From NCBI RefSeq assembly GCF_002113885.1, contig NW_018403913.1, positions 67,990 to 131,989 of the forward strand: a DNA stretch of 64,000 nt, given 5' to 3'. The DNA is from Mizuhopecten yessoensis. Taxonomy: Eukaryota. Of the stretch, positions 29,331-47,577 are shown in pieces. The translations under genes and the position numbers were made by a program. Each line of letters begins with the position of its first letter. Position 1 is the stretch's first letter. Under the pieces are notes generated by a model. It worked only from the letters and a program-made list of their open reading frames with translations. It was not told the DNA's origin and did no database searches.

Positions 29331-31971
29331 TTAGTTTTTAAGCTATATTCGTAGTCGATATATTCACAATGCTATAGGATAAGCAATGCCTATAAACTAT
29401 TATATGTTTACACACATAGTGTAATTTATCAACAGGGAGTCTTATGATCAGATCATGTTCAATCATTTGATTTCTTTATCAACAAAACTCTTTTGTAAGT
29501 GTCGCTGATAGGGATTGAATATGGATCTTATGGTTTCTACCGATTAATCAAAAAGGAGATTGTTTAGAATAAAGCTAGTGAAGCGTTTCAATGTTTATCA
29601 CTCTGACACGTACATCCTATATTAGATTTACATGCTTTTATTTATGGTGTCCTTCAAGGTATACTTTTACATAAAAAAATGGATTTTTAAATTTTCAGCA
29701 GTTACCTCCCTTCATCCAACACAGTTATGATAGTTTAGATAAGTCACGAAAAACAAAAGATTTTACAAGTTCTATTATTATAATCAGTATTTGAAATAAT
29801 TATATATTTTTTAAATATCGCTATAAAGACATGATTTGTTTTACCTGACACTAAATGCAATAATGATGACCATATATTTTGTTTCAAATTATAATAATTC
29901 CAATTTTATGCCAAATAATTCATCTTTGAAGGTGATTAACGAACCATGTAGAGGATATTTACATCATATTTGAGTAGTTGATATCAAAACCTTCCGAAAG
30001 TTGATTCATGTGATAATAAGCTTAAAAATCCTACAATATATTTTATTTGATTATTGAGGTGGTTTTTTTAGCGTCGTCATAACGAAATATAGTATATTGT
30101 TGGTATAAGTTTGTTGAACCCTACATATTAGAAAAACGCTATTTGTAACAAATGCTCCGCTGATCATTTTTAAGCAGCTGAATTTTGGCCACAAAAGCTG
30201 TTATGGTGACCCTGTGAGTTCTTCGCACTAGCGAAGGTCACATTGTTACAATGACCCTCATAGAAATAAATTGTACTCACATACATATGGTCAAAATGTT
30301 AGATGCTGTATTATAACGTAAACAGGTACTAGACCTTGATGGTATTAATATGATTCTACATGGGGTAATTAAACGTAATTGGGATGAATTCAAGTCCGTA
30401 TAAAACTATCATATTGAAATAAATTATAATAATATATATATAATATTATAGCAAAAAAGTATCAAATTAATTTACTACGATATAGTCACACGAATTCTTG
30501 AAAATAGAATATGGTCCAATAACTCTTTGCTTTTTATCGATTACATTTTTTATAATTTCGCGTTAATGTTAGCAAAGTCAAATGAACTTGTTCGTGTTAG
30601 ATGTTTCCGGGTGTGACCGGTTTGATGTCGGTTCATGAAACAATTGTTAGCGATGTATACGTTTTTATTTGATATCTGCAGTTTTGTCAATCGATCGAAA
30701 CAGAATATTGTATAGAATGCTGGAAAACACATCAAACCAGACCACATCAGTATTTTTGGGCTCGTGTGCACATGCGCTAGCGAGCATTCTGATAAATCAA
30801 GAGTACAATTACCCTGCAGTAAATAGTTTATCATCAGTATCGTGTTAAAGTATCTGTTAGCTAGATCAATATATATGATGCTGGTTTTTTGAAATGTTGT
30901 CCTAACTTGACCTATTTGTGAAATTCCAGTCATACGTGCTCTATAAATACATGTAGTAACAATTTGTGAAAACCAGAGATGTTGTATTGCAAAAAGACGT
31001 TAAGTTGACACTGCTGACAATGTCAGTGAAAACCAGAGAAACAGAGTGTGTGGATAAGGGTATTGCATACCATATGAGGACATTAGGTTGACAGTGCTGA
31101 CAATGGGAGTGGTGCTAAAGTTAACAGTGTGGCAGGTTAAGAGAGGAGAATCGACCGTACTACATTGGTGGGTCTTAATTAAGTGTAAACCAAATATGAC
31201 ACCGAGTTCAAAAAGAATGTTATTTATAAAAGACAAACTAGTCTACACAAACATTAGATTGATCAGTAAGTCACGTATGCGCAGCGAATCCCAAATAAAT
31301 CGCGCATAAGGGAAAAGGTAATTAAATGTCCTTGCTCAGAGGAAGGAAGGGTGCGAAAAAATTAAGAATTGAATATCAATCACCCCGTCGTAGACTAAAG
31401 GCAACCCACAAAACGAGCATGTGCAAACTCATTTTTATCTTGAAACAAAATATTGTGTCTGTAAACACTTATCAACGTACTTCGTATCGTACAACGCTAC
31501 ACAAAATTGTCAAAAAAGCGCGAGTCAACACGGCCATGGACCTCATGTTTACTCATCGGACAGTCGATGCCATTAATCTTAATCCGAAGCTTATGTAATC
31601 ACACAAACAAAATGTATTGGAATATTTATTGAAAAAACAAGGGATTAACAGGAGTGTTTGTTCTGGACGGAAATAATACAAAAGAGTATTTACTACATAG
31701 TTTACTTTAAATTAGAAGTAATAATAATATATTGTTATAGTCTAATAATACACATTTCTATAAAGACATCATCAACAGAATCAATAAGCATATTACTCTA
31801 TTTGTAAGCTTTATTTAGAATATCTTGAATCTGTTTTCATATTTGCTTAGCATTGTTTGATTGATGTTTATTTGCATGGACATAAATATCACAGTTGGTC
31901 ACACATAAACAAAAAATGATTGAAACTCCACGATACTGCGTGAAATCACTAGCAATACATTATCACTGCCA

Positions 31972-32022
31972 TCAACGGGAACACATCCACAACAGGAGGA
32001 AGGCCGAGATCACTTCTAGTAC
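31972..32022 (-). CDS. Gene 1 last coding exon, hydrophobic GPI-signal-like tail
   Basis: TTTTACAG acceptor; VLEVISAFLLLWMCSR*; minus-strand AATAAA at ~31867, ~31810 and ~31625. Confidence 0.75.
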   Translation of the reverse strand, partial: VLEVISAFLLLWMCSR

Positions 32023-35000
32023 CTGTAAAAGTATGTAAAATATGTTTATATAACAAATTAAAATATTCTTCATGTATAAGAATTCAGGTTAGATATGTTG
32101 ATTACATTTAAAATAAATAAGGAAGGAAAAAACAATCAATAGTAATGAAAAAACAATGAAGAGAAGTGTCTTCGTTAATTGCCTATCGACATGATTGTAG
32201 TTATGTTTCGTGCTTAATGTTTTTATTCAAATATGCTAAGAAACTTTGGGTAACCACATTATCAATAATGGGAGACAAGTGACAGGTTTAAATCATCTGA
32301 TATTTTAAATTATACGCCGCTCTGTTAATCAGTGTCTGCCCGTTACGAATAACCTCATCACTTTATATATAAATAAATGATTATTTAACAATTTAATTAA
32401 TGAAAATGCTTTGGGAAATAACGAACATTATTCCTTTCTTATGCTAGTTTTTCAACATAAAATACATATCTCAAAAAACGTCAGCGTACTTTGTAACCGG
32501 TTCAAACACCCATCAAATACTGTATCGCATCTATCAATAATGAGTAAATAGCCAATTAATAAGTTCTTCATTTTAAGTAATTTAAAACACATATTAAGGC
32601 TGAACCTGGACTAAAAATACCTACAAAACATTTAAAAAAAAAAAAAAAAAAATGAACGATTCAATTGGGGCAAGGGAAGTAGTTCTATTAATAGATTGTT
32701 AGATTTTTTTGTCAGAAGTTTTTAATTTAATTAAAGAAAACCAATTTACATCTTAATTAATTTGTTTCTTTGTAATCAATGCAAACAAGTTATTCATCTT
32801 ACTGGAACGACGAATTATAGTGAGTGATGACAATATGAATTGCTGTGCAGTTCATAGAACTTGTGTCAAGACCCACTGAGGTTTATATCCAATAAACCTC
32901 AATAAAGCAGGATTCAATTCACCTTATCTGAACCTTTCCTCTAATTCTCTACTTACGGTGTTGGTTTGCAAATGACATCCGCTGTTATGACCAAACGTGC
33001 CGTTATTTGCAATGCAATCGATGTCTGTAATGTTGGAAAGTAAGAGGTTTAGACAAAAATCATGCTATTTATATGAATTTATCAAGTTCGAATATGTACC
33101 CTCTTCTTTATTATGAAAAATTCACAAAATATTCACTAAAAAGACGTGGTGTTTAAAAAGTCTGCACGTAAAGGAAAATCAAATGACATATCTAATATAA
33201 TAATATATTAATAATGTTCCCGAAAACAGGCACTGATTGAGAGAAATACATTGTATTTATTTATTTCAGACGTATTTATTGACTGTTCTTTAGAAGTTGT
33301 CCAAACTCACAATCGATAAAAAGTAGGGTGAACTATGTAAGAAGGTAAGATCTAATTGGAAACCCTTGAAAGGTACAACGAGAAAAAGAACTTGTGTTCC
33401 GGAAGGGAAAGTGTCTTCTGCTTCACTAACGACATCTGTCGTTTAAATCTAGAAATAATTTCTCCCATGCCAGAGCAATCTGATTGGACGGAAATCTTGT
33501 ATATCGCTTGCGAAATCATTTGGTAAGAAAGTAATACAAGATCCAGGTATGCTTATCGTACGTACCATTCTCAACGTTTCCAAAGCAGTACCTCTCTGGA
33601 CAGGTAGTCCTAGCCTTGAGCTCATAGGCATAATACGACTGACAGTTGACGACTCTTATCTGAACTCTCTCTCCGCAGCAATCAGTTTCATTTCTCACGC
33701 ATGCGTTTCTTGTCACGATGCCGTCAGATGGCGTTGGATGCCGTTCTATCACAAAGGAGAGTCAGGATATAATCCAAAACAATTTCAATGATTCCATTTT
33801 AAATACTTGATGACAGATATAATCGCTAGACTGGATACACTGTCTGAAATAGCTTTGCCGATACACATGTTTTTTAATATTCAAAGATAATTATAGAATT
33901 AACCAGTTCTCTGTATGTTTTGGAACAAATTTGTTGGAAGATGCCTCTTATATTATATATTNNNNNNNNNNNNNNNNNNNNNNNNNNNNNNNNNNNNNNN
34001 NNNNNNNNNNNNNNNNNNNNNNNNNNNNNNNNNNNNNNNNNNNNNNNNNNNNNNNNNNNNNNNNNNNNNNNNNNNNNNNNNNNNNNNNNNNNNNNNGTGA
34101 TTTTTAATTGTTTTATCAAAAGCAAAGTTTAGGTGATTATTGTGAGAAAGCATTATTTTATATATCGGAAATACCTTCGAGCCAGATCGGCGAAGGTTAT
34201 TCATTCATTCATTCATTCTTTCATTCATTCATTCTTTCATTCATATTCATTCATTCATTCATTTGATTTTTATTCTTAATGTGATTTTTTATTTGTTTTA
34301 TCAAAAGCAAAGTTTAGGTGATTATTGTGAGAAAGCATTATTTTATATATCGGAAATCCCTTCGAGCCAGATCGGCGAAGTCGCGCCGCAGTATCCGGGA
34401 CGTGGACACTTGTCAGACATTTTAAGCCCGGTGCCATCACTCCCATGTTTGTTCACACGGTACCATCCATTAATGTTGTTGTCACACAGATCCATTCGAG
34501 AACACGTAGGAGCCCTGTGTCCATCGTCTACTAGCTCCTCACGGTCAATATCCACACACGGATCTTCAATGACAAAATTATGTGACATCCTGCGTCGTAA
34601 ACATTGATTGCCTTCTATAGATCGTAATTACGCAAAAACATACTTATATATTTTATTTTCCCGATATTTATGACGTTCTAAACGAAGAATTGAACTGTTA
34701 ACAAGAACATAAATGTAGTAGAGGTTACTTTTTATTTCACTTTGTACTTAATTAGGTTTATAATCCTATATTTCGGAGAGCATATTTGTGAAGACGTTTT
34801 AGCATGCAACGTAATTAATAAGGCATTGCTACTTTGACAAACTTCAACAGTAAATAGTGTTTATAAGACGTATATATGTTAATTAATATTTTTTCTAAAG
34901 TGTTTTTTATTTGAGTTTTGATTCCACCGAGATCCAAGAATAATCTTTGTGCCCACCATAGTAAGATCGTCATTGTTTCTTCGTAAATTATATCTTTTCT

Positions 35001-38000
35001 TTAATCTGTTGAAGTTGAGTCATGTCAACAAAACAATCTAATGCAACTGGTGGTAACTTTATGCTGTTGTATTTCATATTGTCTTTTCAACGCGAGGTTG
35101 TGAGATTTCGAGAAAGACCTGTCAAGTACTTCTTACAAACCCCTACTTTCAAAATCAATGATGGTAGCTTGGCAATCATATTGTTTCTACGACCAGTCTT
35201 AAAATCGGGAAAATGTATAACTAAGAAACTAAGACAAAAGAAAATATTTACGTTAAAATTATGAAAGCTCTGTAAATTACTACTTGTAGCATAGCGATGT
35301 CAGTCTTTGATATTTATATATTTCGTTGGTTTATTAAATAAATTGTTCTAACGTTTACATTTTAAAGTCTCGTTATTTTACTTTGACATTAATCTGACAT
35401 ACAGTTACATGTTTTCCCAAGTACATACCTGTTGGTGGACATGGCACATTTTCACCTACAAATAAAATGTAATTCATGATAATTACCACTGATGTTCTAT
35501 AAGTGAAATCCACATCCCATTCTAAACCTTTGAGTTTGTTTAAATGTCAGTAAATGTTTTACAAATATTTAAGGAAAGGAAAATCAAATAACATATCTAA
35601 TAAAATATTAATATTGTTCCCGAAAACAGGCACTGATTGAGAAAATACAGTGTATTTATTAATTTCAGGCGTATTTATAAACTGTTTTTTAGAAGTTATC
35701 CAAACTCACAATCGATAAAAAGTAGGATGAACTATGTAAGAAGGCAAGATCTAGTTGGAAAACCTTGAAAGGTACAACGAGAAAAAGAACTTGTGTTCCG
35801 GAAGGGAAAGCGTCTTCTGCTTCACTAACGACATCTGTCGTTTAAATCTAGAAATAATTTCTCCAATGCGAGATAATCTGATTGGACGGAAATCTTGTAT
35901 ATTGCTTGCGAAATCATTTGGTAAGAAAGTAATACAAGAATCCAGGTATGCTTGTCGTACGTACCATTCTCAACGTTTCCAAAGCAGTACCTCTCTGGAC
36001 AGGTAGTCCTAGCCTTGAGCTCATAGGCATAATACGACTGACAGTTGACGACTCTTATCTGAACTCTCTCTCCGCAACAATCCGTTTCATTTCGTACACA
36101 TGCGTTTCTTGTCACGATGCCGTCAGAGCGCGATGGATGCCGTTCTATCAAAAAGGAGAGTCAGGATATAATCCAAAACAATTTCAATGATTCCATTTCA
36201 AATACTTGATTACAGATATAATCGCTAGACTGGATACACTGTCTCAAATAGCTTTCCCAATACACATATGTTTCAATATACTAAGATAATTATAGAATTA
36301 ACCAGTTCTCTGTATGTTTTGGAACAAATTTGTTGAATGATAGCTCTAACATTATATATTTTTTATCATTCATTTCATTCACTCTTTCATTAATTCATAT
36401 TTTCTTCCATTCATTCATTCATTCATTTTTTTTAAAAATATTTATTGTGATTTTTTATTTGTTTTATCAAAAGCAAAGTTTAGGTGCTTATTGTGAGAAA
36501 GCATTATTTTAAAAGAGCGAAAATACCTTCGAGCCAGATCGGCGAAGTCGCGCCGCAGTATCCGGGACGTGGACACTTGTCGGACATTTTAAGCCCGGTG
36601 CCATTACTCCCATGTTTGTTCACACGGTACCATCCATTAATGTTGTTGTCACACAGATCCATTCGAGAACACGTAGGAGCCCTGTGTCCATCGTCTACTA
36701 GCTCCTCACGGTCAATATCAACACACGGATCTTCAATGACAAAATTATGTGACATCCTGCGTCGTAAACATTGATTGCCTTCTATAGATCGTAATTACGC
36801 AAAAACATACTTATATATTTCATTTTCCCGATATTTATGACGTTCTGAACAAAGAATTGAATTGTTAACAAGACCATAAATGTAGTAGAGGTTTCTTTTT
36901 ATTTCACTTTGTACTTAATAAGGTTTAGAATCTTTTGTTTCAGAGAGCATATGTGTGAAGACGTTTAAGCGTGCAAGGTCATTAATAAGGCATTGCTACT
37001 TAGACAAACTTCAACAGTTAATAGTGTTTATAAGACGTATATATATGTGAAATAAAAAAAATCTAAAGTGTTTTTTATTTGAGTTTTGATTCCGTCGTTA
37101 AAAAAAACAATATCCAAGAGTAATCTTTGTACCCATTATCGTAAGATCGTCATTGTTTCTTCGTAAATTATATCTTTTCTTTAATCTGTTGGAGTTGAGT
37201 CATGTCAACAAAACAATCTAATGCAACTGGTGGTAACTTTATGCTGTTGTATTTGATATTGTCTTTTCAAAGTGAGATTGTGAGATTTCGAGAAAGACCT
37301 GTCAAGTACTTCTTGCAAACCTCTTCTTTCAAAATCAATGATGGTAGCTTGGCAATCATTTTGTTTCTACGACCAGTCTTAAAATCGGGAAAATGTATAA
37401 CTAAGAAACTAAGACAAAAGAAAACATTTATGTTAAAATTATGAAAGCTCTGTAAATTACTACTTGTAGCATAGCGATGTCAGTCTTTGATAATTATATA
37501 TACCGTTGGTTTACTAAATAAATTGTTCTAACGTTTACATTTTAGAGTCTAGTTATTTTACTTTGACATTAATCTGACATACAGTTACATGTTTTCCCAA
37601 GTACATACCTGTTGGTGGACATGGCACATTTTCACCTACAAATAAAATGTAATTCATGATAATTACCACTGATTCTCTATAAATGAAATCCACATCCCAT
37701 TCTAAACATTTGAGTTTGTTTAAATGCCAGTAAATATTTTACAAATATTGACTGACGACCATAAATGGTGTTGTGCAAAATTTAGACCCTCCCAAGAAGT
37801 AAAGAAAAAGAACGGAAACGGTAATGTTCAATACCGCAAAATACAAAGCTAAATATCACATTTCATATGTTTACTTTCACATATGCATACGTACTTACAC
37901 ACATACAACTGTAATTTTATTGAGAGAAATGAGGCATTATCTATCTTTTTATTTATTTATTTCTGTCATTACGCAACTTAGATAGTTACTTCCAAATATT

Positions 38001-40508
38001 ATGCTCTTTTTAACCATCGTTATTAGTTCGATATTATGTCTTACATTGTGAAAAAATGCCAGGATAATATATGTATGAGATATAATCAATTAGTAAACTT
38101 TGGTAAGAGTGGCTTTAATTTAATAACGATAAATGATACGTTTCTTACCAAAGCAGTAGGCCATTTCCAATCCAGTTGTTTTTTGTAATTTGTAGACATT
38201 AAATGCACTGCAGTTTTTCACCTGTATTTTGTATTCTTCCTGGCATTTCATCGTTGGACCTGTCATACACGCTGTCCTGTTAACTGTCACACCAGTGTCT
38301 GGATGTGTACCTGAAAAGAGAACATAATGTTTATTTAACCTCATATTTCAATGTATTATGATAGATGTGGCTATTAGAAACATTTTATATATCAAAAGCC
38401 ATACGTTTTATGATATTTTAGAAAGGGGAAAAGGGCAACCTTTTTAAATCGAACTGTTTCAAATCATGAATTTGCAGCTAAACGGTATCTTTCGTAACGT
38501 TGGCATATAAAACGTATCAGAAATTTAAATAATTCCTGCAAACAAAGTTATATACAATTTGTCTGGAGTAGAAATAACTAGCTTTAAGGAATAAAAGTGC
38601 AATTTGCAAATTTACTTTATACTTAGATATATATCCAATATTTTAATTAATCGCTAATGAAATACATCATTAGACTAATAATACGTAGAATAAGTGAATG
38701 AAAGAATGTAGAATGATCAAGAATTATCTCTAATATTAAAAACGAATATTGTAAATAAGGAAACTACTTAGGTAAATTTCATTTAAATATTTTATGCTAT
38801 ATTTCTCCCTTGCAAATATTACTTACTATATTTCATTCATTTATTTATCCTAATATCAATCATTCATCTAGTCCTATAAAAAAAATGTAAACATTGAATT
38901 GATTACAATATGTCGTGTTTAACATAATTGAACAACTACATATAGTTTACTTAGATACAGATTTAAAACATATTCTGTTTATATTATGACTTACGTTAAT
39001 CCATCGTTAAAACTCTTATCAAAAGTGTCGCAGTTTTTATTGGTTGATTTATTGCATTGTACATGTAACCACGAACGCACAAATAAAACGGATAAAATCA
39101 CAATAGCAGTAAGATATTTTTTAAAATAAGGTTCAAGACAAAAATGTCAAGTGTTTTAACTGATGTTGATGTGATAAGAATAATAAGTATTAACATTAAG
39201 TAATTGTATCGTACTGGCAGGCGCGTAGCTGCCACGTAAGCAAATAAGCAGTTGCATGCACATACAAAATTTAAATATACTATTATATTTTTATTTATTT
39301 ATTTTGTAGTTCGGAAAAGTGATTAAATGATGTGTGGTTCATTTGAAAAATATATTAAATTTAACTGTATAACCGACAGCCGACAATCAGTACGCATCCC
39401 GAAGTTCCAACCTATAGGGTACCTGGTGCCGATTTTATTATTAGTATTTTTTAAGTTGTCAACATCGGAAACATGACTGCAAAGCCAACGAAAAACCCGC
39501 ATCATCTTCGAATAACAAGTTTATACATGACTTCTTCCAAGCAGCTGTAGGTTCACATGAAACAACATCCTCTTGCGACATTAACTTAGACATCGACGAG
39601 TCTAAAATGGCTATTTGTATTAGGGCCTAGTAATGCCGGACCGACCGAACACAGTTCTGATCAGTCTGACTGTTGTTACCTCTGATATCGGGAAAACAAG
39701 CGAGGGCGATATTTGTCTTACTTAAGTGAAGGTGGATTTCGATATCCTGTCAAAAAGATGGGAAAAAGCTCACGAGTTCAAATTCCATCCACGGCAACAT
39801 TTTAACAAACGATGGTCATAAAATACAGCTAAGTCAACGGAGGCGGGTTGTTTTTCCGGAATGGATGTATTTTTGTGTATATTTTTTTCACCAATTAAAG
39901 GTCTTCCGAATAACAATTGTAGATTGATTTGTTACTAGCATTGTTGTTATAGGTCTTAGGGCGGATATATGCGCGGATAGGATCCATCTGAGTTTTACAT
40001 TCACTTCGCCTGCAAATGTAATATGAAAAAGGCAAAGCCCCAAAGCCAGAAAAAAAGCCACGTACTTGTAGCTTTTGCTAATCTTTGACATTATATAGGC
40101 CTTCATTTGTCCCTGTCATGAACTAATTAAGTATTTTTTTAAGAGTAGTCCTGGGCCTATCTTCGGTAGGGCTACTGGATATATATGTATACATATATCT
40201 AAACATCGATATAGGAGCTAGCGTTATCTTAGGTTCTGAGAAATGTTGATGATATAAAGAGGATTTGGGGGACACAACAGCAAAAAATCTGAAATTAACC
40301 TGTTCATATTGCCTCCGACATTTTAAATATCTAGTTAATTAAGATTCATCAGGAAAGAGATATGACGCAACGGATATTTTCGGGTAATTCCAACAATCGA
40401 CACATTTTTGTCGGAGAGAAAAAGGAGAAAAAAGAGCTCAAATATGTATCTAAAAAGCCACCAGATGGCACGATAGTGCTTCTAGATATCTAGATATCTA
40501 AAAAAAAT

Positions 40509-40541
<33 letters not shown>

Positions 40542-43500
40542 CATGCCCCCGTACCCCTCTAGAATGGCTTCTTCATGCACATACAAAACAGTCCAGCTAC
40601 GCGCCTGACTGGTCAGTGATATTGCGATTTTGCTTTATGTTAATATGTTCTATTCCCTGTTCAACATATTTAGGAAAATAATACACTAAAGCTGAATTAC
40701 TTTTGATAATTTATGTTGTTCTAAAGTCTTTACAGTATCTGATAACAGGAAGTAGTTGCGTGTTGCGTGTTGAATGCGTTAAAAAATATCTTTTAATTTA
40801 ACAAGCAAGCAAGCAAGCAAGCAGGTTGTACAGATTATCTCCTTCCTAGTAACGCTACGGCCGAATAACATTTGTTATCTAACAGGAAGTTGCTGCGAGA
40901 TGATACGTCAATAAGTTTTAATCAAACTCAATTTATATGTAATAAAGAGATGAATTTTTATCTAAAGACATGTTCTTTGTAACATTGGGATTATCCCCCG
41001 CTGAAATTTCGTCAATTCATGTTTACTTTATAGGGATACAAACAGTTGTTGACCAGAAACGTTAAGACTTATAGATAATTTTGTCATATGTTCCACGTAC
41101 AATACAACTTACCCTTAAGTTGATTGATAAATTATTATTTCTTTACAGAAAATATTTTAACCCAAAAATAAATTGAAGTTCAGCAAGAAAGTCGTCTTTT
41201 TAAGATAATGTCGGTTGACTTATCAGTTATAACATATATACAAAACAATACAGAGACAACATACAATATCTCCTTTTGTTTGTTTGTATTAAAAAATTGC
41301 CAAGATTTCAAATGTCGGATACATTCTCACAAGTAAGTAGTTGAATTCATTTGTACATGCTTGTATGTCTTATATAATCTTTCTTAATTAGTTTCAACCT
41401 TATATCAATATAGCAAGGACATTTTAAAATGAAATGGAACTCATCCTCGACATCATTCAGGTCACATACTGTACAAAATCTGTTTTGTATTTCAGTTCGA
41501 TTATATCTGCCACACTCAATATTTAACTTATGTGCAGACATTCGAATTTTACATATTTGTTTTAAATAATTTATATTTACAGGTTTTGATAAATAATACT
41601 GGTGACCAAAATTACACACATATTGATACAATGCTCCTTTAGGAGAAGATTGAATTTTTTCAAAACATTCTTGTCTGAATATGTCACAAAGACGTTCTTT
41701 TATAATGTGAAAAGTGTTATTATTTAAACTGGAGGATTCCCACACATTTCCAAGACCAATTCTGTATAATTCTTCTTTTACACTCATTAACAAAATGTCA
41801 TTATTACCAAGCATATCATCATAGCATGACCTTAGAATATAATTTCCTACATTTCTCAGTTTTATCCAATATTTGAATATACGTAATTTTCTAACTATTT
41901 TCATGGGATATCTTCCAAGTTCATAATACACCATACTATTTTTATGTAGTAGTAATATTTGTTTGCAGAATCTCACATGCAATTTTCGATATCTGGTGCA
42001 GCATGGAAGCCCCATACTTCTGCTCCATAACTTAAAACACTATTTACATAAGTATCAAAACAGACAATTGAGTTTTTATATTAAAATTGTTTTCTTACAA
42101 ACATTTGATAATGCAAACAAAGATGTTCTCCCCTGGTCAGCGGCTTGCTTTTGAGTTTGTCTAAATTTTCCGTTAAAATCAATAGATAGTTCGACAGCAC
42201 ACAGCAATTTATAAAAACCTTGTTCTTAAAAATTAAAATAACTATTACAGAATTGTGTAAAATGTTATTCAAAAGCGTAAATATACATTGAGTAGCATAT
42301 CGGTGATATTTTGTTGAAATATGACATAATATTTAACATGTAGATTTATTAATATTGATGAGTTTATACAAGGTTTTGAAAGTTGATTCCACACACTTAA
42401 TTGAACGGTTTTCTAAAAATCAACAAAGCAACAGTTTAATCGTCTAACTTTAGTGAATAATCTAATTGTGAATCGAACGGAGAAAAAGTAGCGTCCACTC
42501 TGCTTGAATCCGGTCTGAATTATGTATCTGGCCATACTAAAATGTGCTGTGCAGCACAGAGATAAACATTTTGCTAAACTAATTTACAAAAAAAATAAAA
42601 ATGTATCCCTCTAAAATTTAAAGGTTAGTTTAATTCATCCGTTTTATGCACAGGCCTAATTACAACAAAAAGGCCAAACGGTAATATATTATTCATATCA
42701 ATCATATAAATCTTGAAGTTTCAGGATACAGATTCACTTAACTAGTTTGCTCATTTCCAAATTTTTTACTGTCCCAATTCCAATCTTTTTAAATATCTTA
42801 CAATTTTGAAGACAAAATATTTTTTTATTGATTTGATATTCTGCTTCAGATGAAAAATGTTTTCATTCCTCAAAATATACTTTAATATGATACAATAAAT
42901 ACTATTAACAAAAAAATAATTTTAGTTTGTACGCATCAATAAAATATTAAAAAACAAGATACGCATTTTACTTCTTTTGCTTATCATTAAAAGATCAAAA
43001 CATACCATTCATCCAGATGGGCAATTTGGTACTACATTCGTCGACGTTAACAGGAAATGTTGGCATACTCAGTGGGCCATTGGATCCCACTGCTATGTAC
43101 CACATACTATCTTTGATGTACCGGTCATTTACTGCTTTCCCAAGTCTGTAGTTGCATTTTGTTCCTCTGTATTTCCCTTTGTGGATTCTTTCGTGACTAA
43201 CGCACGGATCTGAAACTAAAAGGAAACTAGGAATCATATATTGAAATTGTTTGATACGCCGAAAGCAAGAAGATTATACCCTTTAATTGTATTTTATCAC
43301 ATGTGGTCGACATGAAAATATGATATTTACAGTCGGGATGAATATAGATGATATAGAAACAATACACCCTAATGGCGAATCACAGATAAGATGATAATAT
43401 CACAGATGTAGTACATCAACAATATTACACGTAGTATCAGAAAAGATATTGAAGTTTAAAGTCGTTTTATCGAACAAACTGTTTGTAAAATGTTTAGAAC

Positions 43501-43616
43501 AATTCCATCTGGTATTAAACAATAAATAGTCTTTACTTACCCGCAGAAGATTCGGACGGCAATACATACATCAGAATCACTAAAAAAGACAGTATACAGG
43601 ACATGCTTGTCGCCAT
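31972..43616 (-). CDS. Gene 1: uromodulin/GP2/OIT3-like (D8C-domain) GPI-anchored glycoprotein; 11 coding exons, ~460 aa (323 aa without the duplicated module)
   Basis: Exons 43541-43616, 43006-43209, 38149-38310, 37609-37635, 36527-36730, 35965-36144, 35429-35455, 34360-34563, 33566-33745, 32957-33024, 31972-32022 join in one frame (1383 nt). D8C hallmarks DPC..WY..MP..C.T..PIW..G.HP..V.R.AC..I.V.NC..Y.L..YCF; signal peptide; hydrophobic C-terminal tail. Confidence 0.85.
32957..33024 (-). CDS. Gene 1 penultimate exon, stalk with likely GPI omega region
   Basis: TTACAG acceptor; DIDCIANNGTFGHNSGCHLQTNT; GTAAGT donor; phase 1 to 0. Confidence 0.75.
33566..33745 (-). CDS. Gene 1 duplicated D8C C-half exon (copy B)
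   Basis: Near-identical to 35965-36144 (HPTPSDG vs HPSRSDG); splice sites intact. Confidence 0.85.
33962..34096. other. Assembly gap
   Basis: N run. Confidence 1.
34360..34563 (-). CDS. Gene 1 duplicated D8C N-half exon (copy B), donor mutated to GG
   Basis: Near-identical to 36527-36730; exon end reads GAAG|GGATTT instead of GAAG|GTATTT. Confidence 0.7.
35429..35455 (-). CDS. Gene 1 duplicated 27-nt microexon (copy B)
   Basis: Identical to 37609-37635 including splice sites. Confidence 0.65.
35965..36144 (-). CDS. Gene 1 exon 6, D8C domain 2 C-half (copy A)
   Basis: ERHPSRSDGIVTRNACVRNETDCC..IRVVNCQSYYAYEL..CPERYCFGNVEN; TAG acceptor, GTACGT donor; 180 nt. Confidence 0.9.
36527..36730 (-). 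CDS. Gene 1 exon 5, D8C domain 2 N-half (copy A)
   Basis: DPCVDID..LCDNNINGWYR..MSDKCPRPGYCGATSPIWLE; AAG acceptor, GTATTT donor; 204 nt like exon 2. Confidence 0.9.
37609..37635 (-). CDS. Gene 1 exon 4, 27-nt Cys-containing linker microexon
   Basis: TGTAG|GTGAAAATGTGCCATGTCCACCAACAG|GTATGT = GENVPCPPT, phase 1-1. Confidence 0.75.
38149..38310 (-). CDS. Gene 1 exon 3, D8C domain 1 C-half
   Basis: TTTTCAG acceptor; GTHPDTGVTVNRTACM..IQVKNCSAFNVYKL..AYCF; GTAAG donor; 162 nt. Confidence 0.92.
39017..41210 (+). repeat. Copy 1 of a ~0.8-0.9 kb dispersed direct repeat, interrupted by a hAT-like element
   Basis: Colinear with 44408-45312 (TTATCAAAAGTGTCGC ... GTCGTCTTTT). Confidence 0.9.
39218..40607. 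mobile_element. Non-autonomous hAT-like DNA transposon with 5-bp TSD (hAT5-like)
   Basis: Perfect 14-bp TIR CAGGCGCGTAGCTG; ACTGG on both flanks (39213-39217, 40608-40612); empty site at 44601-44605. Confidence 0.9.
41215..42540 (-). mobile_element. Decayed, internally deleted RTE-X-like LINE
   Basis: ORF 41347-42015: VYYELGRYP, IRMSAHKLNIECGRY, CTVCDLNDVEDEFHFILKC; broken RT remnants to ~42540. Confidence 0.85.
43006..43209 (-). CDS. Gene 1 exon 2, D8C domain 1 N-half
   Basis: TTTCAG acceptor; DPCVSH..VNDRYIKDSMWY..MPT..CSTKLPIWMN; GTATGT donor; 204 nt. Confidence 0.92.
43541..43616 (-). CDS. Gene 1 exon 1, signal peptide
   Basis: MATSMSCILSFLVILMYVLPSESSA then G|GTAAGT (phase 1). Confidence 0.85.
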
Positions 43617-44407
43617 TCGACCTGACTGTACACTGTAGGTCACTGTGCATTCCTATCAACCCAACGAAAGTCTCGTAGTCCTCACACTGTCTCATTGGCT
43701 AGCATTTTATTTGTTTAAGTAAAAATATAGCGTTATAACAGTATCGATTCCTATCGCAGCAACTAGATGTGTGCTTTGGCCAATAAATCAACCTAATCCC
43801 GTGAAAGCAAGACAAAAAAATATTATGCTTATAAGATTTAATCATCAAAATAATTAAGATAACATCAAGTATATGCCCGCGTCAATATAAATGACACGCC
43901 ATGACATATGTATTATTTCCGAATAGCATACATTCACTTTTACAGTGACATTGTTTTTGTATGTATAATAAAGCTTTGATTAATGTATAAAATACAGCAG
44001 ACAATAAAATATGCAATCCTTGCGAAGGAAAATATATAATGCAATAACAAATATACAAGACTGACTGCTAGGTTTTTCTGTCTTCTTGGGTTTCTCCATC
44101 CTGACAGATGTTAATTAGTTACCAGTAGTTGCATCACGTCATCAATAGTAATGCATTAAACAAGCATAGTGACGTCAACAATAAACAATAGCAGAGACGT
44201 CATGAACAATATTAGGACCGCGTAAATCACGTGCATTCAACAGACTATGAAAATTATTATGCATTAAAGCTGGATTTGACGGCTTTATAAATATTTGTTC
44301 TGTAAGTTCTCGAATCATCACAATTCAGCTAAACATTTATTAAATAAAAACATCATCCTGAAAACATTAAAGCATATAATTGACAACTCTTAAACACCTT
44401 TATTCAT

Positions 44408-45312
44408 TATCAAAAGTGTCGCCCTTTTTATTGATTGTATTATTCTATTGTACATGTAACCACGAATGCACGAATAAAACGGATATATATCTCAATAGCA
44501 GTAACAGATTTCTTTTTAAAATAAGATTCAAGATAAAAATGTCAAGTGTTTTAACTGATGTTAGAGAATAATAAGTATCAAAATTAAGCAATTTCATCAG
44601 ATTGGTTATTTATATTGCGATTTTGCTCTATGTTAATATGTTTTACAACCTGTTCAACATATTTCGGGGAAAAAATACACTTAAGGTATTACTTTTGATA
44701 ATTGATAATGTTCTAAAGTATTTAAAGTATCTGATAACATTAGAATGAGAAATTGAAACTGTAATATGATGACATCTAAGTATATCATAGTTATACTAAA
44801 TACTTTCTTGGCTGTGCATTCAACATTGTGTTATTGTTGTAATCAGCAACGCGTAAAATATCGTTTAATTTAACAAGCGCTAACAGGCAGGTTTTACAGA
44901 TTATCCCCTTCCTAGTAACGCTACGGCCGAATAACATTTGTTATCTAGCAGGAAGTTGTTGCGTAATGAATGCGTCATCAACTTTTGTATCGACCTCAAT
45001 TGATATGTAAATAAAAAGATGAATTTTAAACCTATCTGATTGATTTCTTATAATCTGTCAGTCGTTTTAGAGTAACAGACTTATCTAAAGACATGTTCTT
45101 TGTATCATTGGGATTATCCCCCGCTGAAATTTCGTCAATTCATGGTTACTTAACAGGTATACAAACAGTTGTTGACCAGACAGGTTAAGACTGCTAGAAT
45201 TTTTGTCATATGTTCCTCGTACAAAGCAACCTACCCTTAAATTGCTTAACAGAAATTATAATAACTCAAAATATATTGAAGTTCAGCAATAATGTCGTCT
45301 TTTATATATAAT
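44408..45312 (+). repeat. Copy 2 of the dispersed direct repeat, upstream of gene 1
   Basis: Shares near-identical blocks with copy 1, e.g. CCTTCCTAGTAACGCTACGGCCGAATAACATTTGTTATCTA and CATTGGGATTATCCCCCGCTGAAATTTCGTCAATTCATG. Confidence 0.9.
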
Positions 45313-45787
45313 GAGAGAACAGATATTTCGGTAAATTAGCCAAAGCTTCAAAGATTTTCCTATACATAAGCCAGCATCCTTCATGTTGCAAAGATAAGCA
45401 ATCACTTCAAGAAAGATGATTCGAACTCCATAATTTTCCTTTAGCCAAATCACGCTATTCAAAAGAATAAGTTAATAACAATTGTTTCAAAATAAAAAAT
45501 ACAAGGTTTGACAATATTGTAAGACCAACATACTATCCATATAAATTTTTATGAAGTTTCCAAGCTACTTTCCAAATAGAACCAGAAACCGTTTGAATTT
45601 AGGTGTAGCCTTTAGCAATGTTCGTAATACAAGGACAGGAAGCTAATGCAGTTGAAGGTTGAACATGATGAGCGCATGATAGTTCCTCTAGAGTTCTCGT
45701 AAGGTTTTTTTAAGTTAAACATGAAACCGGTTGGACTTTTGTCACTTCGATGAATAAACAACAGAGTTTCGAGTGTTAAAAAAATAG

Positions 45788-45858
45788 CATGGCTAGTCCG
45801 GGATTCGAAACCTTGACTTTTGTTATACTATCGCTCTAACCGATTGAGCTTGGTCAAC
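45788..45858 (-). mobile_element. tRNA-derived sequence (SINE head or tRNA pseudogene)
   Basis: Minus strand AGCTCAATCGGTTAGAGCG (A box/D arm) ... GGTTTCGAATCCC (B box) ..GCCA; anticodon arm broken. Confidence 0.6.
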
Positions 45859-45975
45859 GGGAGTGTCCAGGACCAACTGTGCTACAATAATATACAAACG
45901 GAGGTAACTATTTACACGAAAACAATCGAAATTAAAACAATAGTGTGTTGGTAGGAAAGCCTATTGATTTTATTT

Positions 45976-47577
45976 TCGAAGGAGGTTGTGGGTTTTTTGC
46001 GATATAACGCGACATTTTTGCGAAATAACGCGAAACATTCGCGCTATATTGCGAAACCTACTTAATAAGATAAGATAACTTTGTTTAAAGAGGATAACAA
46101 TTAAGGATTATACTTTTCTTCCGAAAGGTCATCTATTATATACATTTGACTCATAGGTAAATAGCATACCTACTACATGTAACCATAGCATCCTATCTCA
46201 CATATTAATGTCTCTTTGGAAACTCAGGATACAAACACAATGTAAAATCAATTTGATATTTAAATTCAGATGCAAGTTTCAAATTCCAACATCATTGATA
46301 TTATGTTCAACAGTAATATTTTTTAACACACAGATCAGATACAAAGCATATTGCACACACGCACACACTCACACACTTACACNCCCCCCCCCCCCCCCCC
46401 CCCCCCTATTTGATATAAAGTCTTTCATTTGTTCATATGTATATGTTAATGAGATTTCTGGAAATAAATTATACAAGTTATTGGCATGATTTGAGTTTAT
46501 TGATTTGTCATCCGCTGTCATATCATTCGGATAGTCAAGGATAATGCGTCATATTTTTTTGAAGTTTAAGTATAGAGTAAAGATGATGAGATAATGTTAC
46601 CCCAGATTGTGCAGCAATAATCGAAATGAGGTTGTACTGGTTTCTTCCTTATAGAAAATAATCCGAATATGTAATTAAAGCTAATTTTAAATCTGCGTAA
46701 AAGACTCAATAGTAAAATTATACACTGAATTTGGGTTGACTATAAATAATCCTGTCCGCTTAACATATCCAACATCTTATCACTTTTTACATATTCTATA
46801 CAACTTTCATTGGCTCTAACCTTAATACCGTGTGAGCTAACAAGTGTTGTCTTCGAATAAATAGCATATGTTTTGTTTTACTTACATGTATATCTGTTCT
46901 TATCTTGTTTGCAAAAGCATTGCTGTCTGTATAACTGACTTTGTATGACAGGATATTGTTGCATTATCAGCAAAAAGGTCTGTTCGCAGTCGTCTACAGT
47001 AAGATGTAAATCACTAATATATATGAAATATAAAAGCGGGCCAGAATTGTTCCTTGAGGAACTCTTTACAAGTCGAGTAGATGAGGTTTATTCCTCTATT
47101 CAGCCTGTCCGAAATCTAGTATAAAGATAAGAAGAAGGAAAGTACAGTAATGCTTTGAATCCAAAGTGTTATTTTCTGAATTTCTGTATTGGGATGTTAA
47201 AATCTACCATGTCGAAAGCTTTCCAATAATCGATATATAAAATTGCTTTGAAATTTCCTGTGTCAATAGCAGAATGCAAGTTATCAATTAACGCCGGTTG
47301 CAGTGTTTGACAAGAATACTTTTGTCTAAATCAAGATCGAAAATCGAATATCAACATGTGTTTCAATAGATAGTTTCATAGGTGTCCGATATATGCTGTT
47401 TAGACGGATGTATCATTTGCAGGACTGGAACATTCCGCCTATGAGTTAACATTCATCAGTACTTGTACAAAACATCATTTGTAAAAATGTCATTAAAAGC
47501 GTTGCAATCGCTTTCATAAGAAGTTTCGGATGATATCGCGAAAATTTCGCGTTTTTACGCGAAAAAAACCCTCCCGA
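45976..47577. mobile_element. Inverted-repeat (MITE/foldback-like) element with CGCG-rich subterminal repeats, split by a LINE
   Basis: 45976-46058 (GGAGG..GTTTTTTGCG..AACGCGAAA..TTCGCG.TAT..GAAAC) is an imperfect reverse complement of 47521-47577. Confidence 0.55.
46065..47420 (-). mobile_element. Highly decayed CR1/L2-like LINE fragment with 3' UTR
   Basis: Minus-strand RT remnants ..YIDYWKAFDMVD.. (~47200-47240) and VPQGTIL (~47043-47063); (ATCTT)n tail at 46065-46079. Confidence 0.7.

What the first reader, a model, noticed from the sequence alone, without database searches (positions are those of the whole stretch)
31972..43616. ZP-less, GPI-anchored tandem-D8C protein: candidate invertebrate analogue of the GP2/uromodulin bacterial decoy
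Seen: the reconstructed gene encodes only a signal peptide, 2-3 D8C domains, a short stalk, an NSG small-residue site and a hydrophobic tail, with N-glycosylation sequons (NRT, NCS, NGT, NET, NGT). Known: vertebrate GP2 and UMOD are GPI-anchored and use their glycosylated D8C/D10C region as a decoy for bacterial FimH, but always alongside a ZP polymerisation module. Inference: here valency may come from tandem domain repetition instead of ZP filaments, giving a mucosal microbe-binding surface protein. Whether this architecture is already described is unknown to me.
Basis: partly seen in the sequence, partly recalled or inferred. Interest (0 to 1): 0.7.

Follow-up and report, generated by a model that had tools for sequence, protein, structure and literature searches.

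The report
Scallop GPI-type tandem uromodulin-domain surface protein
This is a real, strongly transcribed Yesso scallop gene for a small cell-surface glycoprotein made only of two (three in this assembly) uromodulin/GP2-type D8C/D10C domains plus a probable lipid (GPI) anchor; such proteins without the filament-forming ZP part are common but unstudied in invertebrates, and the proposed role as a bacterial decoy is unsupported.

Summary
On the minus strand, 43616 to 31972, eleven exons give an open frame. It encodes a signal peptide, D8C/D10C modules, a short stalk with N-S-G, and a 16-residue hydrophobic end. Each module is an N-half exon, a C-half exon and a 27-nt linker exon, all in phase 1.

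RNA contigs of two studies confirm four splices: linker to N-half, N-half to C-half across the assembly gap, C-half to stalk, and stalk to last exon. So the gap is intronic. The stop lies in the last exon.

The organism is Mizuhopecten yessoensis. NCBI holds only a truncated 148-aa "uromodulin-like" model here. Orthologues in Argopecten and Pecten have two modules and the same N-[S/N]-G, 7-residue spacer and hydrophobic end, so a GPI anchor is likely (about 0.75, by rule only).

The third module is a 2.2-2.4 kb tandem copy seen only in this reference. Its N-half donor reads GG in the assembly. One RNA sample shows only one module of that type.

ZP-less D8C-only proteins are the norm among relatives (105 of 110 have D8C, 3 have ZP-N). 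The FimH-binding glycan sites of UMOD (N275) and GP2 (N65) are absent, so the decoy idea stays speculative.

Other notes of this scan describe the duplication here and D8C membrane receptors elsewhere in this genome.

The parts
43541..43616 (-). Exon 1: start ATG at 43616; signal peptide with a 13-residue hydrophobic core, then S-S-A before the mature N-terminus DPC; donor G|GTAAGT, phase 1
   Evidence: There are in-frame stops upstream of the ATG. Not covered by the RNA laid here.
43006..43209 (-). Ea: N-half of D10C domain 1, a variant that lacks the C2 and C3 cysteines
   Evidence: tblastn with the Argopecten orthologue: 63% identity, E 6e-27.
38149..38310 (-). Eb: C-half of domain 1, with sequons NRT and NCS; an NGT sequon spans the Ea/Eb junction
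   Evidence: Pfam D8C at 18.6 bits. 67% identity to the orthologue. Splice sites.
37609..37635 (-). E3a: 27-nt linker micro-exon (E-N-V-P-C-P-P-T), phase 1-1
   Evidence: The orthologues have E-G-E-R-C-P-P-T and E-D-E-P-C-P-P-T at the same place.
36527..36730 (-). Ec: N-half of domain 2 (tandem copy 2), with sequon NGT
   Evidence: No RNA contig of this type was seen in X1 or X3.
35965..36144 (-). Ed: C-half of domain 2 (tandem copy 2), with sequon NET
   Evidence: Pfam D8C at 28.2 bits. An RNA contig of run X3 covers 36047-36146 with no differences and carries a loose end equal to the end of an N-half exon.
35429..35455 (-). E3b: second copy of the 27-nt linker micro-exon, identical in sequence to E3a
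   Evidence: RNA joint 35432 to 34565 in X1 and X3. The joint cannot tell E3b from E3a.
34360..34563 (-). Ee: N-half of domain 3 (tandem copy 1); the donor reads GG in the assembly
   Evidence: The RNA contigs are of Ee type and are spliced exactly at 34360.
34097..34195 (-). Misplaced partial copy next to the gap: the last 21 nt of an Ee-type exon, an intact GT donor and the following intron bases up to the gap
   Evidence: 98% identical to 34286-34380; sequence read.
33962..34096 (.). Assembly gap (N), lying inside the Ee-Ef intron
   Evidence: The RNA joint 34360 to 33745 skips it. It was not filled.
33566..33745 (-). Ef: C-half of domain 3 (tandem copy 1), with sequon NET
   Evidence: Pfam D8C at 30.6 bits. 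The X1 contig covers 33571-33745 with no differences at depth about 1100.
32957..33024 (-). Stalk exon, 23 residues including N-N-G-T and H-N-S-G; the candidate omega site is N435 in the three-module numbering; the exon ends in phase 0
   Evidence: RNA joints on both sides in X1 and X3.
31972..32022 (-). Coding part of the last exon: 16-residue hydrophobic C-terminus and the TGA stop
   Evidence: RNA joint 32957 to 32022.
31604..31971 (-). 3' UTR, with AATAAA at 31630
   Evidence: The X1 contig of 419 nt has 356 more letters below the stretch's start at 31960, about 370 nt past the stop. Poly(A) signal found.
33171..37749 (.). Tandem duplication of the three-exon module. Copy 1 is about 33171-35570 and copy 2 about 35571-37749.
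   Evidence: exons 98.5% and 95.6% identical, introns 92-95%.

Best explanation
This is an expressed gene of the Yesso scallop (Mizuhopecten yessoensis) for a small surface glycoprotein.

A cleaved signal peptide is followed directly by tandem D10C domains, the full form of the D8C domain of uromodulin and GP2. There are two in the orthologues and in at least one RNA sample, and three in the reference haplotype. 9-residue Cys-Pro-Pro linkers follow domains 1 and 2; the last domain runs straight into a roughly 20-residue stalk, and the protein ends in a GPI-attachment signal: omega N-S-G, a 7-residue spacer and a 14-16-residue hydrophobic end with no cytoplasmic residues.

Shown here: the exons and splices of the 3' half, the stop codon, the domain homology and fold (the fold on the orthologue), and conservation of the whole plan in three scallop genera.

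Inferred: signal-peptide cleavage; replacement of the C-terminal peptide by a GPI anchor in the ER, so that the D10C domains sit on the outer leaflet of the cell membrane and may be shed; and N-glycosylation at three sequons of domain 1 that are conserved in all three species.

The protein has no ZP module, so it cannot polymerise as UMOD and GP2 do. Its ligand is unknown. Binding of microbes or of other surface proteins is possible but has no support here.

The third module arose by a recent tandem duplication of a phase-1 three-exon unit. That duplication may be polymorphic or partly mis-assembled.
For: Gene model and transcription:
- The exon model has an open frame.
- RNA contigs of two studies (X1 at depth about 900-1100, X3 at about 20-100) carry the joints 35432/34565, 34360/33745, 33024/(33566 or 35965) and 32957/22022 is not meant here: the last joint is 32957/32022. 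All but 35432/34565, which the aligner placed 2-3 nt off the splice, and the GG donor noted elsewhere have GT..AG ends on the minus strand. Intron depth is 0-4, and the DNA run X15 lacks these joints.

Domain identity:
- Pfam D8C matches on the exons.
- The existing NCBI model XP_021365321.1 'uromodulin-like' covers Ee (part), Ef, the stalk and the tail.
- The orthologue P0006 scores 76 bits on D8C with two stretches and matches no other family.
- phmmer of P0006 against solved structures finds UMOD and GP2 at E 3e-16 over the whole D10C.
- The AlphaFold2 model of P0006 has pLDDT 91.4. Its best Foldseek match is the GP2 decoy module 7p6r, with target-normalised TM 0.80, rmsd 1.9 A and 32% identity.

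Conservation:
- The orthologues P0006 (Argopecten irradians, 310 aa) and P0171 (Pecten maximus, 330 aa) are about 64% identical to the two-module model and collinear with it.
- Both keep N-[S/N]-G, a 7-residue spacer and a 13-19-residue hydrophobic end.
- The A. irradians locus has the same exon structure.
Against: - No GPI predictor or experiment was available, so the anchor rests on rule and conservation only.
- The hydrophobic end is short and holds a conserved polar or acidic residue.
- The 5' exons were not checked against RNA.
- The Ee donor is GG in the assembly, so the reference allele of module 3 might not splice.
- No Ec-type RNA contig was found, so a three-module transcript has not been seen.
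- The tissue of expression is unknown because the run records are coded.
Confidence: 0.72

Rival explanations
1. One reading: a mucosal decoy that binds bacterial adhesins through the glycans of its D10C domains, with valency coming from tandem domains instead of ZP filaments.
For: - It has the same fold as the GP2 decoy module.
- It has conserved sequons, including the equivalent of UMOD N232.
- It is very highly expressed in one sample.
- The RNA contigs differ from the reference by three amino-acid changes and no silent one in about 450 coding nt. This is a weak hint of fast evolution.
- 'Uromodulin' and 'GP2' homologues appear among genes regulated in mussel gill after a Vibrio bath (PMC7772429). 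That is by annotation name only.
Against: - The two glycan sites that bind FimH (UMOD N275, GP2 N65; PMC8930769) are not sequons in any domain here or in the orthologues. Some relatives do have them: 11 and 55 of 384 domains.
- There is no beta-hairpin partner of the decoy module.
- Two or three domains on a monomer give little valency.
- There are no tissue or challenge data.
Confidence: 0.2
2. The third D8C module is not part of the normal protein. The tandem copy is an assembly artefact (two haplotypes laid in series around the gap) or a copy-number variant, and the real product has two modules (323 aa).
For: - The orthologues have two modules.
- Run X1 shows only Ee/Ef-type exons at depth about 1000 and no Ec or Ed type; X3 shows Ed and Ef types like two alleles.
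- The gap and a misplaced 99-nt copy lie inside copy 1, and its donor reads GG.
- The DNA run X15 hardly covers 33783-35470.
Against: - Ee, E3b, Ed and Ec lie in one gap-free stretch, 34097-46382.
- The copies differ by 5-8% in their introns, with indels. That is several times the roughly 1% I recall as average heterozygosity for this species.
- No alternative contig of the locus exists in the assembly.
- Holes in contig data prove nothing.
Confidence: 0.35
3. The hydrophobic C-terminus is kept as a membrane span, or the protein is simply secreted, so there is no GPI anchor.
For: - No predictor was run.
- Many relatives are type I membrane proteins with a true transmembrane span and a cytoplasmic tail.
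Against: - Only 13-16 hydrophobic residues, with 0-5 residues after them.
- A conserved small-residue triplet sits exactly 7 residues upstream in three genera.
- The model shows a disordered spacer followed by a terminal helix.
Confidence: 0.15
4. It is a GPI-anchored ligand-binding partner or co-receptor of the transmembrane D8C receptors found elsewhere in this genome.
For: - The same domain family occurs with transmembrane spans and tyrosine-motif tails in this genome (scan notes s1-519435 and s1-519469).
- Transmembrane relatives turned up in the protein search.
Against: Pure analogy; there is no co-expression or interaction evidence.
Confidence: 0.1

Closest known systems
Human GP2 and uromodulin (UMOD): GPI-anchored ZP-module proteins with a beta-hairpin plus D10C decoy module (PMC8930769; PDB 7p6r, 7pfp)
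   Same: - Homologous D10C domain: E 3e-16; the orthologue model superposes on 7p6r with TM 0.80 and rmsd 1.9 A.
- The ten-cysteine pattern is kept in domains 2 and 3.
- The N-G-T sequon after P-I-W corresponds to UMOD N232.
- Signal peptide and GPI-type C-terminus.
   Different: - No ZP module, no EGF and no sequence room for a beta-hairpin, so no filament.
- The FimH-binding sequons (N275, N65) are absent.
- Domains are in tandem.
- Domain 1 has lost the C2-C9 and C3-C6 cysteine pairs and, like domains 2 and 3, has an extra cysteine. That cysteine may pair with the linker Cys; this pairing is inferred.
Zebrafish omcins, e.g. Omc5 (PMC11415648)
   Same: - A variable number of tandem D10C domains.
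- Predicted GPI anchor.
- Lineage-specific expansion of the family.
   Different: - The omcins keep EGF IV and the ZP module.
- An antibacterial effect was shown for Omc5; nothing has been shown for this gene.
Predicted 'uromodulin-like' D8C-only membrane proteins of bivalves and cnidarians, e.g. Ostrea edulis XP_056015360.1, Solemya velum KAL5015331.1 and Mytilus edulis 'uromodulin-like'
   Same: - Signal peptide, one to three D8C domains and a membrane tether.
- No ZP.
   Different: - Most have a transmembrane span and a cytoplasmic tail.
- The scallop orthogroup ends in a GPI-type signal.
- None of these proteins has been studied, in the literature I could search.

Membership tests
D8C/D10C domain family (Pfam PF23283) | Match to the family profile above its gathering score | tested here: met
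   Exons Ef (30.6 bits) and Ed (28.2 bits) pass the 27-bit cut-off although each holds only half a domain. The orthologue P0006 scores 76.4 bits with two stretches.
D8C/D10C domain family (Pfam PF23283) | Ten conserved cysteines, C1-C10 as defined for GP2 | tested here: met
   Domains 2 and 3 have all ten plus one extra. Domain 1 lacks C2, C3, one of C6/C7, and C9, that is two whole disulfide pairs. This is by inspection of the and output against the pairing given in PMC8930769.
D8C/D10C domain family (Pfam PF23283) | The D10C fold | tested here: met
   Tested on the orthologue only. The AlphaFold2 model has pLDDT 91.4. Foldseek finds 7p6r_A with TMt 0.80 and rmsd 1.9 A over 124 columns. The window's own joined protein was not folded.
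UMOD/GP2/OIT3-type ZP decoy proteins | ZP module (ZP-N and ZP-C) for polymerisation | tested here: not met
   The stop codon lies in the last exon according to RNA. No ZP hit was found in the exons or in the orthologues.
UMOD/GP2/OIT3-type ZP decoy proteins | EGF domain(s) flanking the D10C | tested here: not met
   No EGF hit. Only 9-residue linkers lie between the domains.
UMOD/GP2/OIT3-type ZP decoy proteins | High-mannose N-glycan site in the hairpin/D10C groove (UMOD N275 or GP2 N65) | tested here: not met
   None of the three domains here, and none of the three in the Argopecten proteins P0006 and P0010, has a sequon at either aligned position.
UMOD/GP2/OIT3-type ZP decoy proteins | Beta-hairpin preceding the D10C (the bipartite decoy module) | tested here: inconclusive
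   The mature N-terminus starts at D-P-C, and the linkers are only 9 residues, so there is no room in the sequence. The model coordinates were not inspected.
GPI-anchored proteins | N-terminal signal peptide | tested here: met
   By inspection: a 13-residue hydrophobic core followed by S-S-A. No predictor was run.
GPI-anchored proteins | C-terminal signal: small omega to omega+2 residues, a 5-10-residue spacer, and a hydrophobic end with no cytoplasmic tail | tested here: met
   N-S-G, then 7 residues, then 16 residues to the end. The same geometry is seen in Pecten and Argopecten.
GPI-anchored proteins | Positive call by NetGPI or PredGPI, or release by PI-PLC | not testable with these tools
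   No such predictor is available here, and the joined protein could not be sent to any tool.

The most novel reading that the evidence does not exclude
Membrane-tethered, ZP-less D10C glycoproteins (GPI- or transmembrane-anchored) are an old and widespread invertebrate family of surface receptors or decoys for microbes. The vertebrate UMOD/GP2 decoy module was later recruited from this family onto ZP filaments. The scallop gene's ongoing module duplication and its amino-acid polymorphism would then reflect selection by microbes.
Probability: 0.12. Interest if true: 0.6.

Novelty: new variant of a known kind. Interest (0 to 1): 0.33.

Why it matters
The D10C domain is known functionally only from vertebrate ZP-filament proteins (UMOD, GP2, the omcins), where it presents a glycan to bacterial adhesins. 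This gene shows the same domain used alone, in tandem, on a lipid anchor, and strongly expressed. It belongs to a large invertebrate family that databases name 'uromodulin-like' but nobody has studied.

It offers a small, tractable protein of 323 aa with which to ask what D10C does without polymerisation. It also corrects a truncated gene model in the scallop annotation. In itself it is an ordinary lineage-specific member of a known domain family.

Tried and rejected
- Pfam on Ea alone gave no hit. The exon was accepted through the orthologue alignment instead.
- The look-up of encoding contigs for the NCBI model P0005 returned nothing, because records of the window's own genome are left out. 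What NCBI annotates over the 5' exons could therefore not be seen.
- A DNA search of the whole assembly for a second haplotype contig of the module found only the two copies in this scaffold, plus a dispersed 150-nt repeat.
- Literature searches for uromodulin or D8C with bivalve, shell matrix or mantle, and for the accession numbers, found only transcriptome lists (PMC7772429, PMC6626399) and no study of ZP-less D8C proteins. A shell-matrix role was considered and dropped for lack of any support.
- A transcript running on into vWD, ZP or transmembrane exons was rejected on the RNA evidence. In Argopecten the neighbouring VWD gene lies on the opposite strand.
- dN/dS between the scallop genera was not attempted, because at about 64% protein identity the silent sites would be saturated.
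- The joined (spliced) protein of this window was built only inside local scripts, for the frame check, the local domain alignment and the orthologue alignment. It was not sent to any database, family or folding tool. Those were run exon by exon, by reference, or on the orthologue P0006.
Full report
**What is there**

The window is AT-rich animal DNA (GC 0.31-0.42). An exact-sequence look-up of one search hit identified the organism. The 148-aa protein P0005 is XP_021365321.1, 'uromodulin-like [Mizuhopecten yessoensis]', and is 100% identical to exons of this locus. The assembly has 987.6 Mb in 82,659 contigs.

On the minus strand I read eleven exons with canonical AG/GT borders:
- signal-peptide exon 43616-43541
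- Ea 43209-43006
- Eb 38310-38149
- a 27-nt linker exon, E3a 37635-37609
- Ec 36730-36527
- Ed 36144-35965
- linker E3b 35455-35429
- Ee 34563-34360
- Ef 33745-33566
- stalk 33024-32957
- last exon, 32022 to the stop at 31974-31972

All internal exons as far as Ef start and end in phase 1, so modules can be added or dropped without breaking the frame. The stalk exon ends in phase 0. The joined frame has 460 codons with three modules, or 323 with two, and no internal stop. The finding's start and end coordinates are exactly the stop and the start codon.

**The assembly gap**

The gap 33962-34096 lies in the intron between Ee and Ef. An RNA contig of run X1, at depth about 1100, joins 34360 directly to 33745 in frame, so the gap does not touch the coding sequence.

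The surroundings of the gap are disturbed. Beside it, 34097-34195 is a misplaced 98%-identical copy of 34286-34380. It holds the last 21 nt of an Ee-type exon, an intact GT donor and the following intron bases, and is separated from the real exon by an (AATG)n-like microsatellite.

At the real exon the donor reads GG. The RNA of two studies is nevertheless spliced exactly there. The GG is therefore either an assembly error or one allele of a polymorphism.

**RNA evidence**

One search for sequencing runs and one laying call were allowed. I laid 31960-37959 on three presumed RNA runs and one DNA run.

X1 and X3 behave as RNA. Exons stand at depth 20-1100 and introns at 0-4. These runs carry exon-exon joints that the DNA run X15 lacks:
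- 35432/34565, linker exon to Ee
- 34360/33745, Ee to Ef
- 33024/35965, C-half exon to stalk; the 35 letters on the exon side are identical in Ed and Ef, so this may equally be 33566
- 32957/32022, stalk to last exon

A 419-nt contig has 356 more letters below the stretch's start at 31960, about 370 nt past the stop. This fits an AATAAA at 31630. The coding sequence therefore ends in the last exon.

The 5' exons (signal peptide, Ea, Eb, E3a) lay outside the 6 kb limit and were not tested with RNA.

**Domain identity**

Pfam D8C_UMOD matches the exon halves. Ef (30.6 bits) and Ed (28.2 bits) pass the 27-bit cut-off on half a domain each.

Exon-length queries cannot reach full-length relatives in the word-based search, so I used the exhaustive search with exon Ef. 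It found 681 cluster representatives at E <= 0.001, many with 2-13 D8C stretches.

The closest full-length hit is P0006, an Argopecten irradians 'uncharacterized protein' of 310 aa. It aligns collinearly to Ea, Eb, Ec/Ee and Ed/Ef at 63-73% identity. Its locus has the same exon plan, with one module fewer. A word search with P0006 added P0171, a Pecten maximus 'OIT3-like' protein of 330 aa. The three scallop proteins are about 64% identical pairwise over their whole length.

Further tests on P0006:
- It matches only D8C in Pfam, with two stretches.
- It matches human UMOD and GP2 chains at E 3e-16, from the D-P-C motif to the last cysteine.
- Its AlphaFold2 model (pLDDT 91.4, pTM 0.77) has the GP2 decoy-module crystal structure 7p6r as best Foldseek match, with target-normalised TM 0.80, rmsd 1.9 A and 32% identity. 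UMOD chains follow.

The domains are thus true D10C domains. Domains 2 and 3 keep all ten cysteines. Domain 1 lacks C2 and C9, and C3 and one of C6/C7. By the pairing given in PMC8930769 these are two complete disulfides. All three domains carry one extra cysteine, and the linker adds one more.

**The C-terminus**

After the last D10C come about 20 residues, then N-S-G, then a 7-residue polar spacer, then 16 mainly hydrophobic residues to the end. Pecten has R-N-S-G, 7 residues and 19 residues. Argopecten has R-N-N-G, 7 residues and 15 residues. In the model, the spacer is disordered (pLDDT below 50) and the end forms a helix.

This is the classical layout of a GPI-attachment signal: small omega to omega+2 residues, a spacer from omega+3 to omega+9, and a hydrophobic tail to the C-terminus (established knowledge; Eisenhaber's rules). 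The hydrophobic run is too short for a membrane span with a tail. I put GPI anchoring at about 0.75. No predictor was available, and the joined protein could not be submitted anywhere.

**Two or three domains**

Copies 33171-35570 and 35571-37749 form a head-to-tail duplication of the three-exon module. Identity is 98.5% and 95.6% in the exons and 92-95% in the introns.

For a real duplication:
- Ee, E3b, Ed and Ec lie in one N-free stretch.
- The divergence is well above the roughly 1% average heterozygosity I recall for this species.
- No alternative contig of the locus exists in the assembly.

Against it, or for a polymorphism:
- Both orthologues have two modules.
- X1 shows only Ee/Ef-type exons and no Ec or Ed.
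- X3 shows Ed-type and Ef-type C-halves but no Ec-type N-half.
- The DNA run X15 hardly covers 33783-35470.

A two-module protein is therefore the ancestral form and the one demonstrably expressed. The three-module protein is predicted from the reference haplotype only.

**Comparison with what is known, and function**

In UMOD and GP2 the decoy module is a beta-hairpin plus D10C. FimH binds a high-mannose glycan at UMOD N275, or at GP2 N65 just after the D-P-C motif (PMC8930769).

I aligned 384 D8C domains from the 149 relatives that matched the local profile (of 150), together with this gene. The N275-equivalent sequon occurs in 11 domains and a GP2-N65-like sequon in 55. None occurs in any domain of this gene or of the Argopecten proteins P0006 and P0010. 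By eye, the Pecten orthologue has none at those positions either.

The conserved sequons are the N-G-T after P-I-W (the UMOD N232 position, which carries a complex-type glycan in UMOD), N-R-T and N-C-S, all in domain 1.

Of 110 relatives of 140-930 aa, 105 have D8C. Only 3 have ZP-N, 1 has ZP-C and 4 have EGF. By a crude hydropathy scan, many relatives have a transmembrane span with a tail and some have a GPI-like end.

ZP-less, membrane-tethered D8C proteins are therefore common in bivalves and cnidarians. In the library I could search they appear only as names in transcriptome lists (PMC7772429, PMC6626399). Tandem D10C is described in the zebrafish omcins, together with EGF, ZP and GPI, and with an antibacterial effect (PMC11415648).

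My best reading is a GPI-anchored, N-glycosylated surface protein whose ligand is unknown. The decoy reading remains possible (about 0.2) but lacks its defining features.

**Limits**

- The joined protein of this window was made only inside local scripts. It was sent to no search, family or folding tool. The fold and the PDB comparisons rest on the orthologue.
- The run records are coded, so the tissue is unknown.

Noticed in passing
window 49409-49609 and 55002-55172 (+ strand): A second D8C gene is transcribed divergently from this one. Its N-half and C-half exons have the same split and phase. Its D-P-C motif is followed by V-N-Y-T, a sequon at the position of GP2 N65. Only one D8C domain was detectable in the window.
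   Followed up: partly
window 35700-35852 and 33300-33450: A dispersed repeat of about 150 nt, SINE-like, lies in the intron below the C-half exon. At least 40 copies at 73-85% identity occur on other contigs. It causes pile-ups of DNA contigs at 35793-35824 and 33394-33425.
   Followed up: partly
window 34399, 33570 (= 35969), 35431: The RNA contigs of X1 and X3 differ from the reference by three amino-acid changes and show no silent change in about 450 coding nt. The changes are Pro to Ser in the C3-C4 loop, Glu to Asp at the end of the C-half exon, and Thr to Ile in the linker. The numbers are small and this may simply be allelic variation.
   Followed up: no
window 37429 / 34637: A contig of the DNA run X15 goes back from 37429 to 34637, with 21 unmatched letters between the two parts. 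This does not fit the reference arrangement of the two copies and is unexplained. It could be another structural allele.
   Followed up: no
window 34196-34285 and 36374-36438: An (AATG)n-like microsatellite lies in the intron between the N-half and C-half exons of both copies. Contigs break there, and the misassembly beside the gap starts there.
   Followed up: partly
window 58324-60086 (- strand) and 41347-42015 (- strand): Reverse-transcriptase fragments (RVT_1; E 8e-14 and 5e-4) lie at 58-60 kb. A 222-aa ORF without any Pfam hit lies inside the 4.7 kb first large intron. These are probably retroelement remains.
   Followed up: partly
L001:17981-26174 (Argopecten irradians): In Argopecten a 458-aa VWD-domain gene lies convergent, 1.8 kb downstream of the orthologue. 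Whether the scallop window has the same neighbour below 31.6 kb was not checked.
   Followed up: no
window 34588-31972 (NCBI model XP_021365321.1): The public gene model for this locus is truncated to 148 aa. It starts at an internal ATG in the intron before Ee, leaves out the last third of Ee through a donor inside the exon, and misses the signal peptide and the upstream modules.
   Followed up: yes
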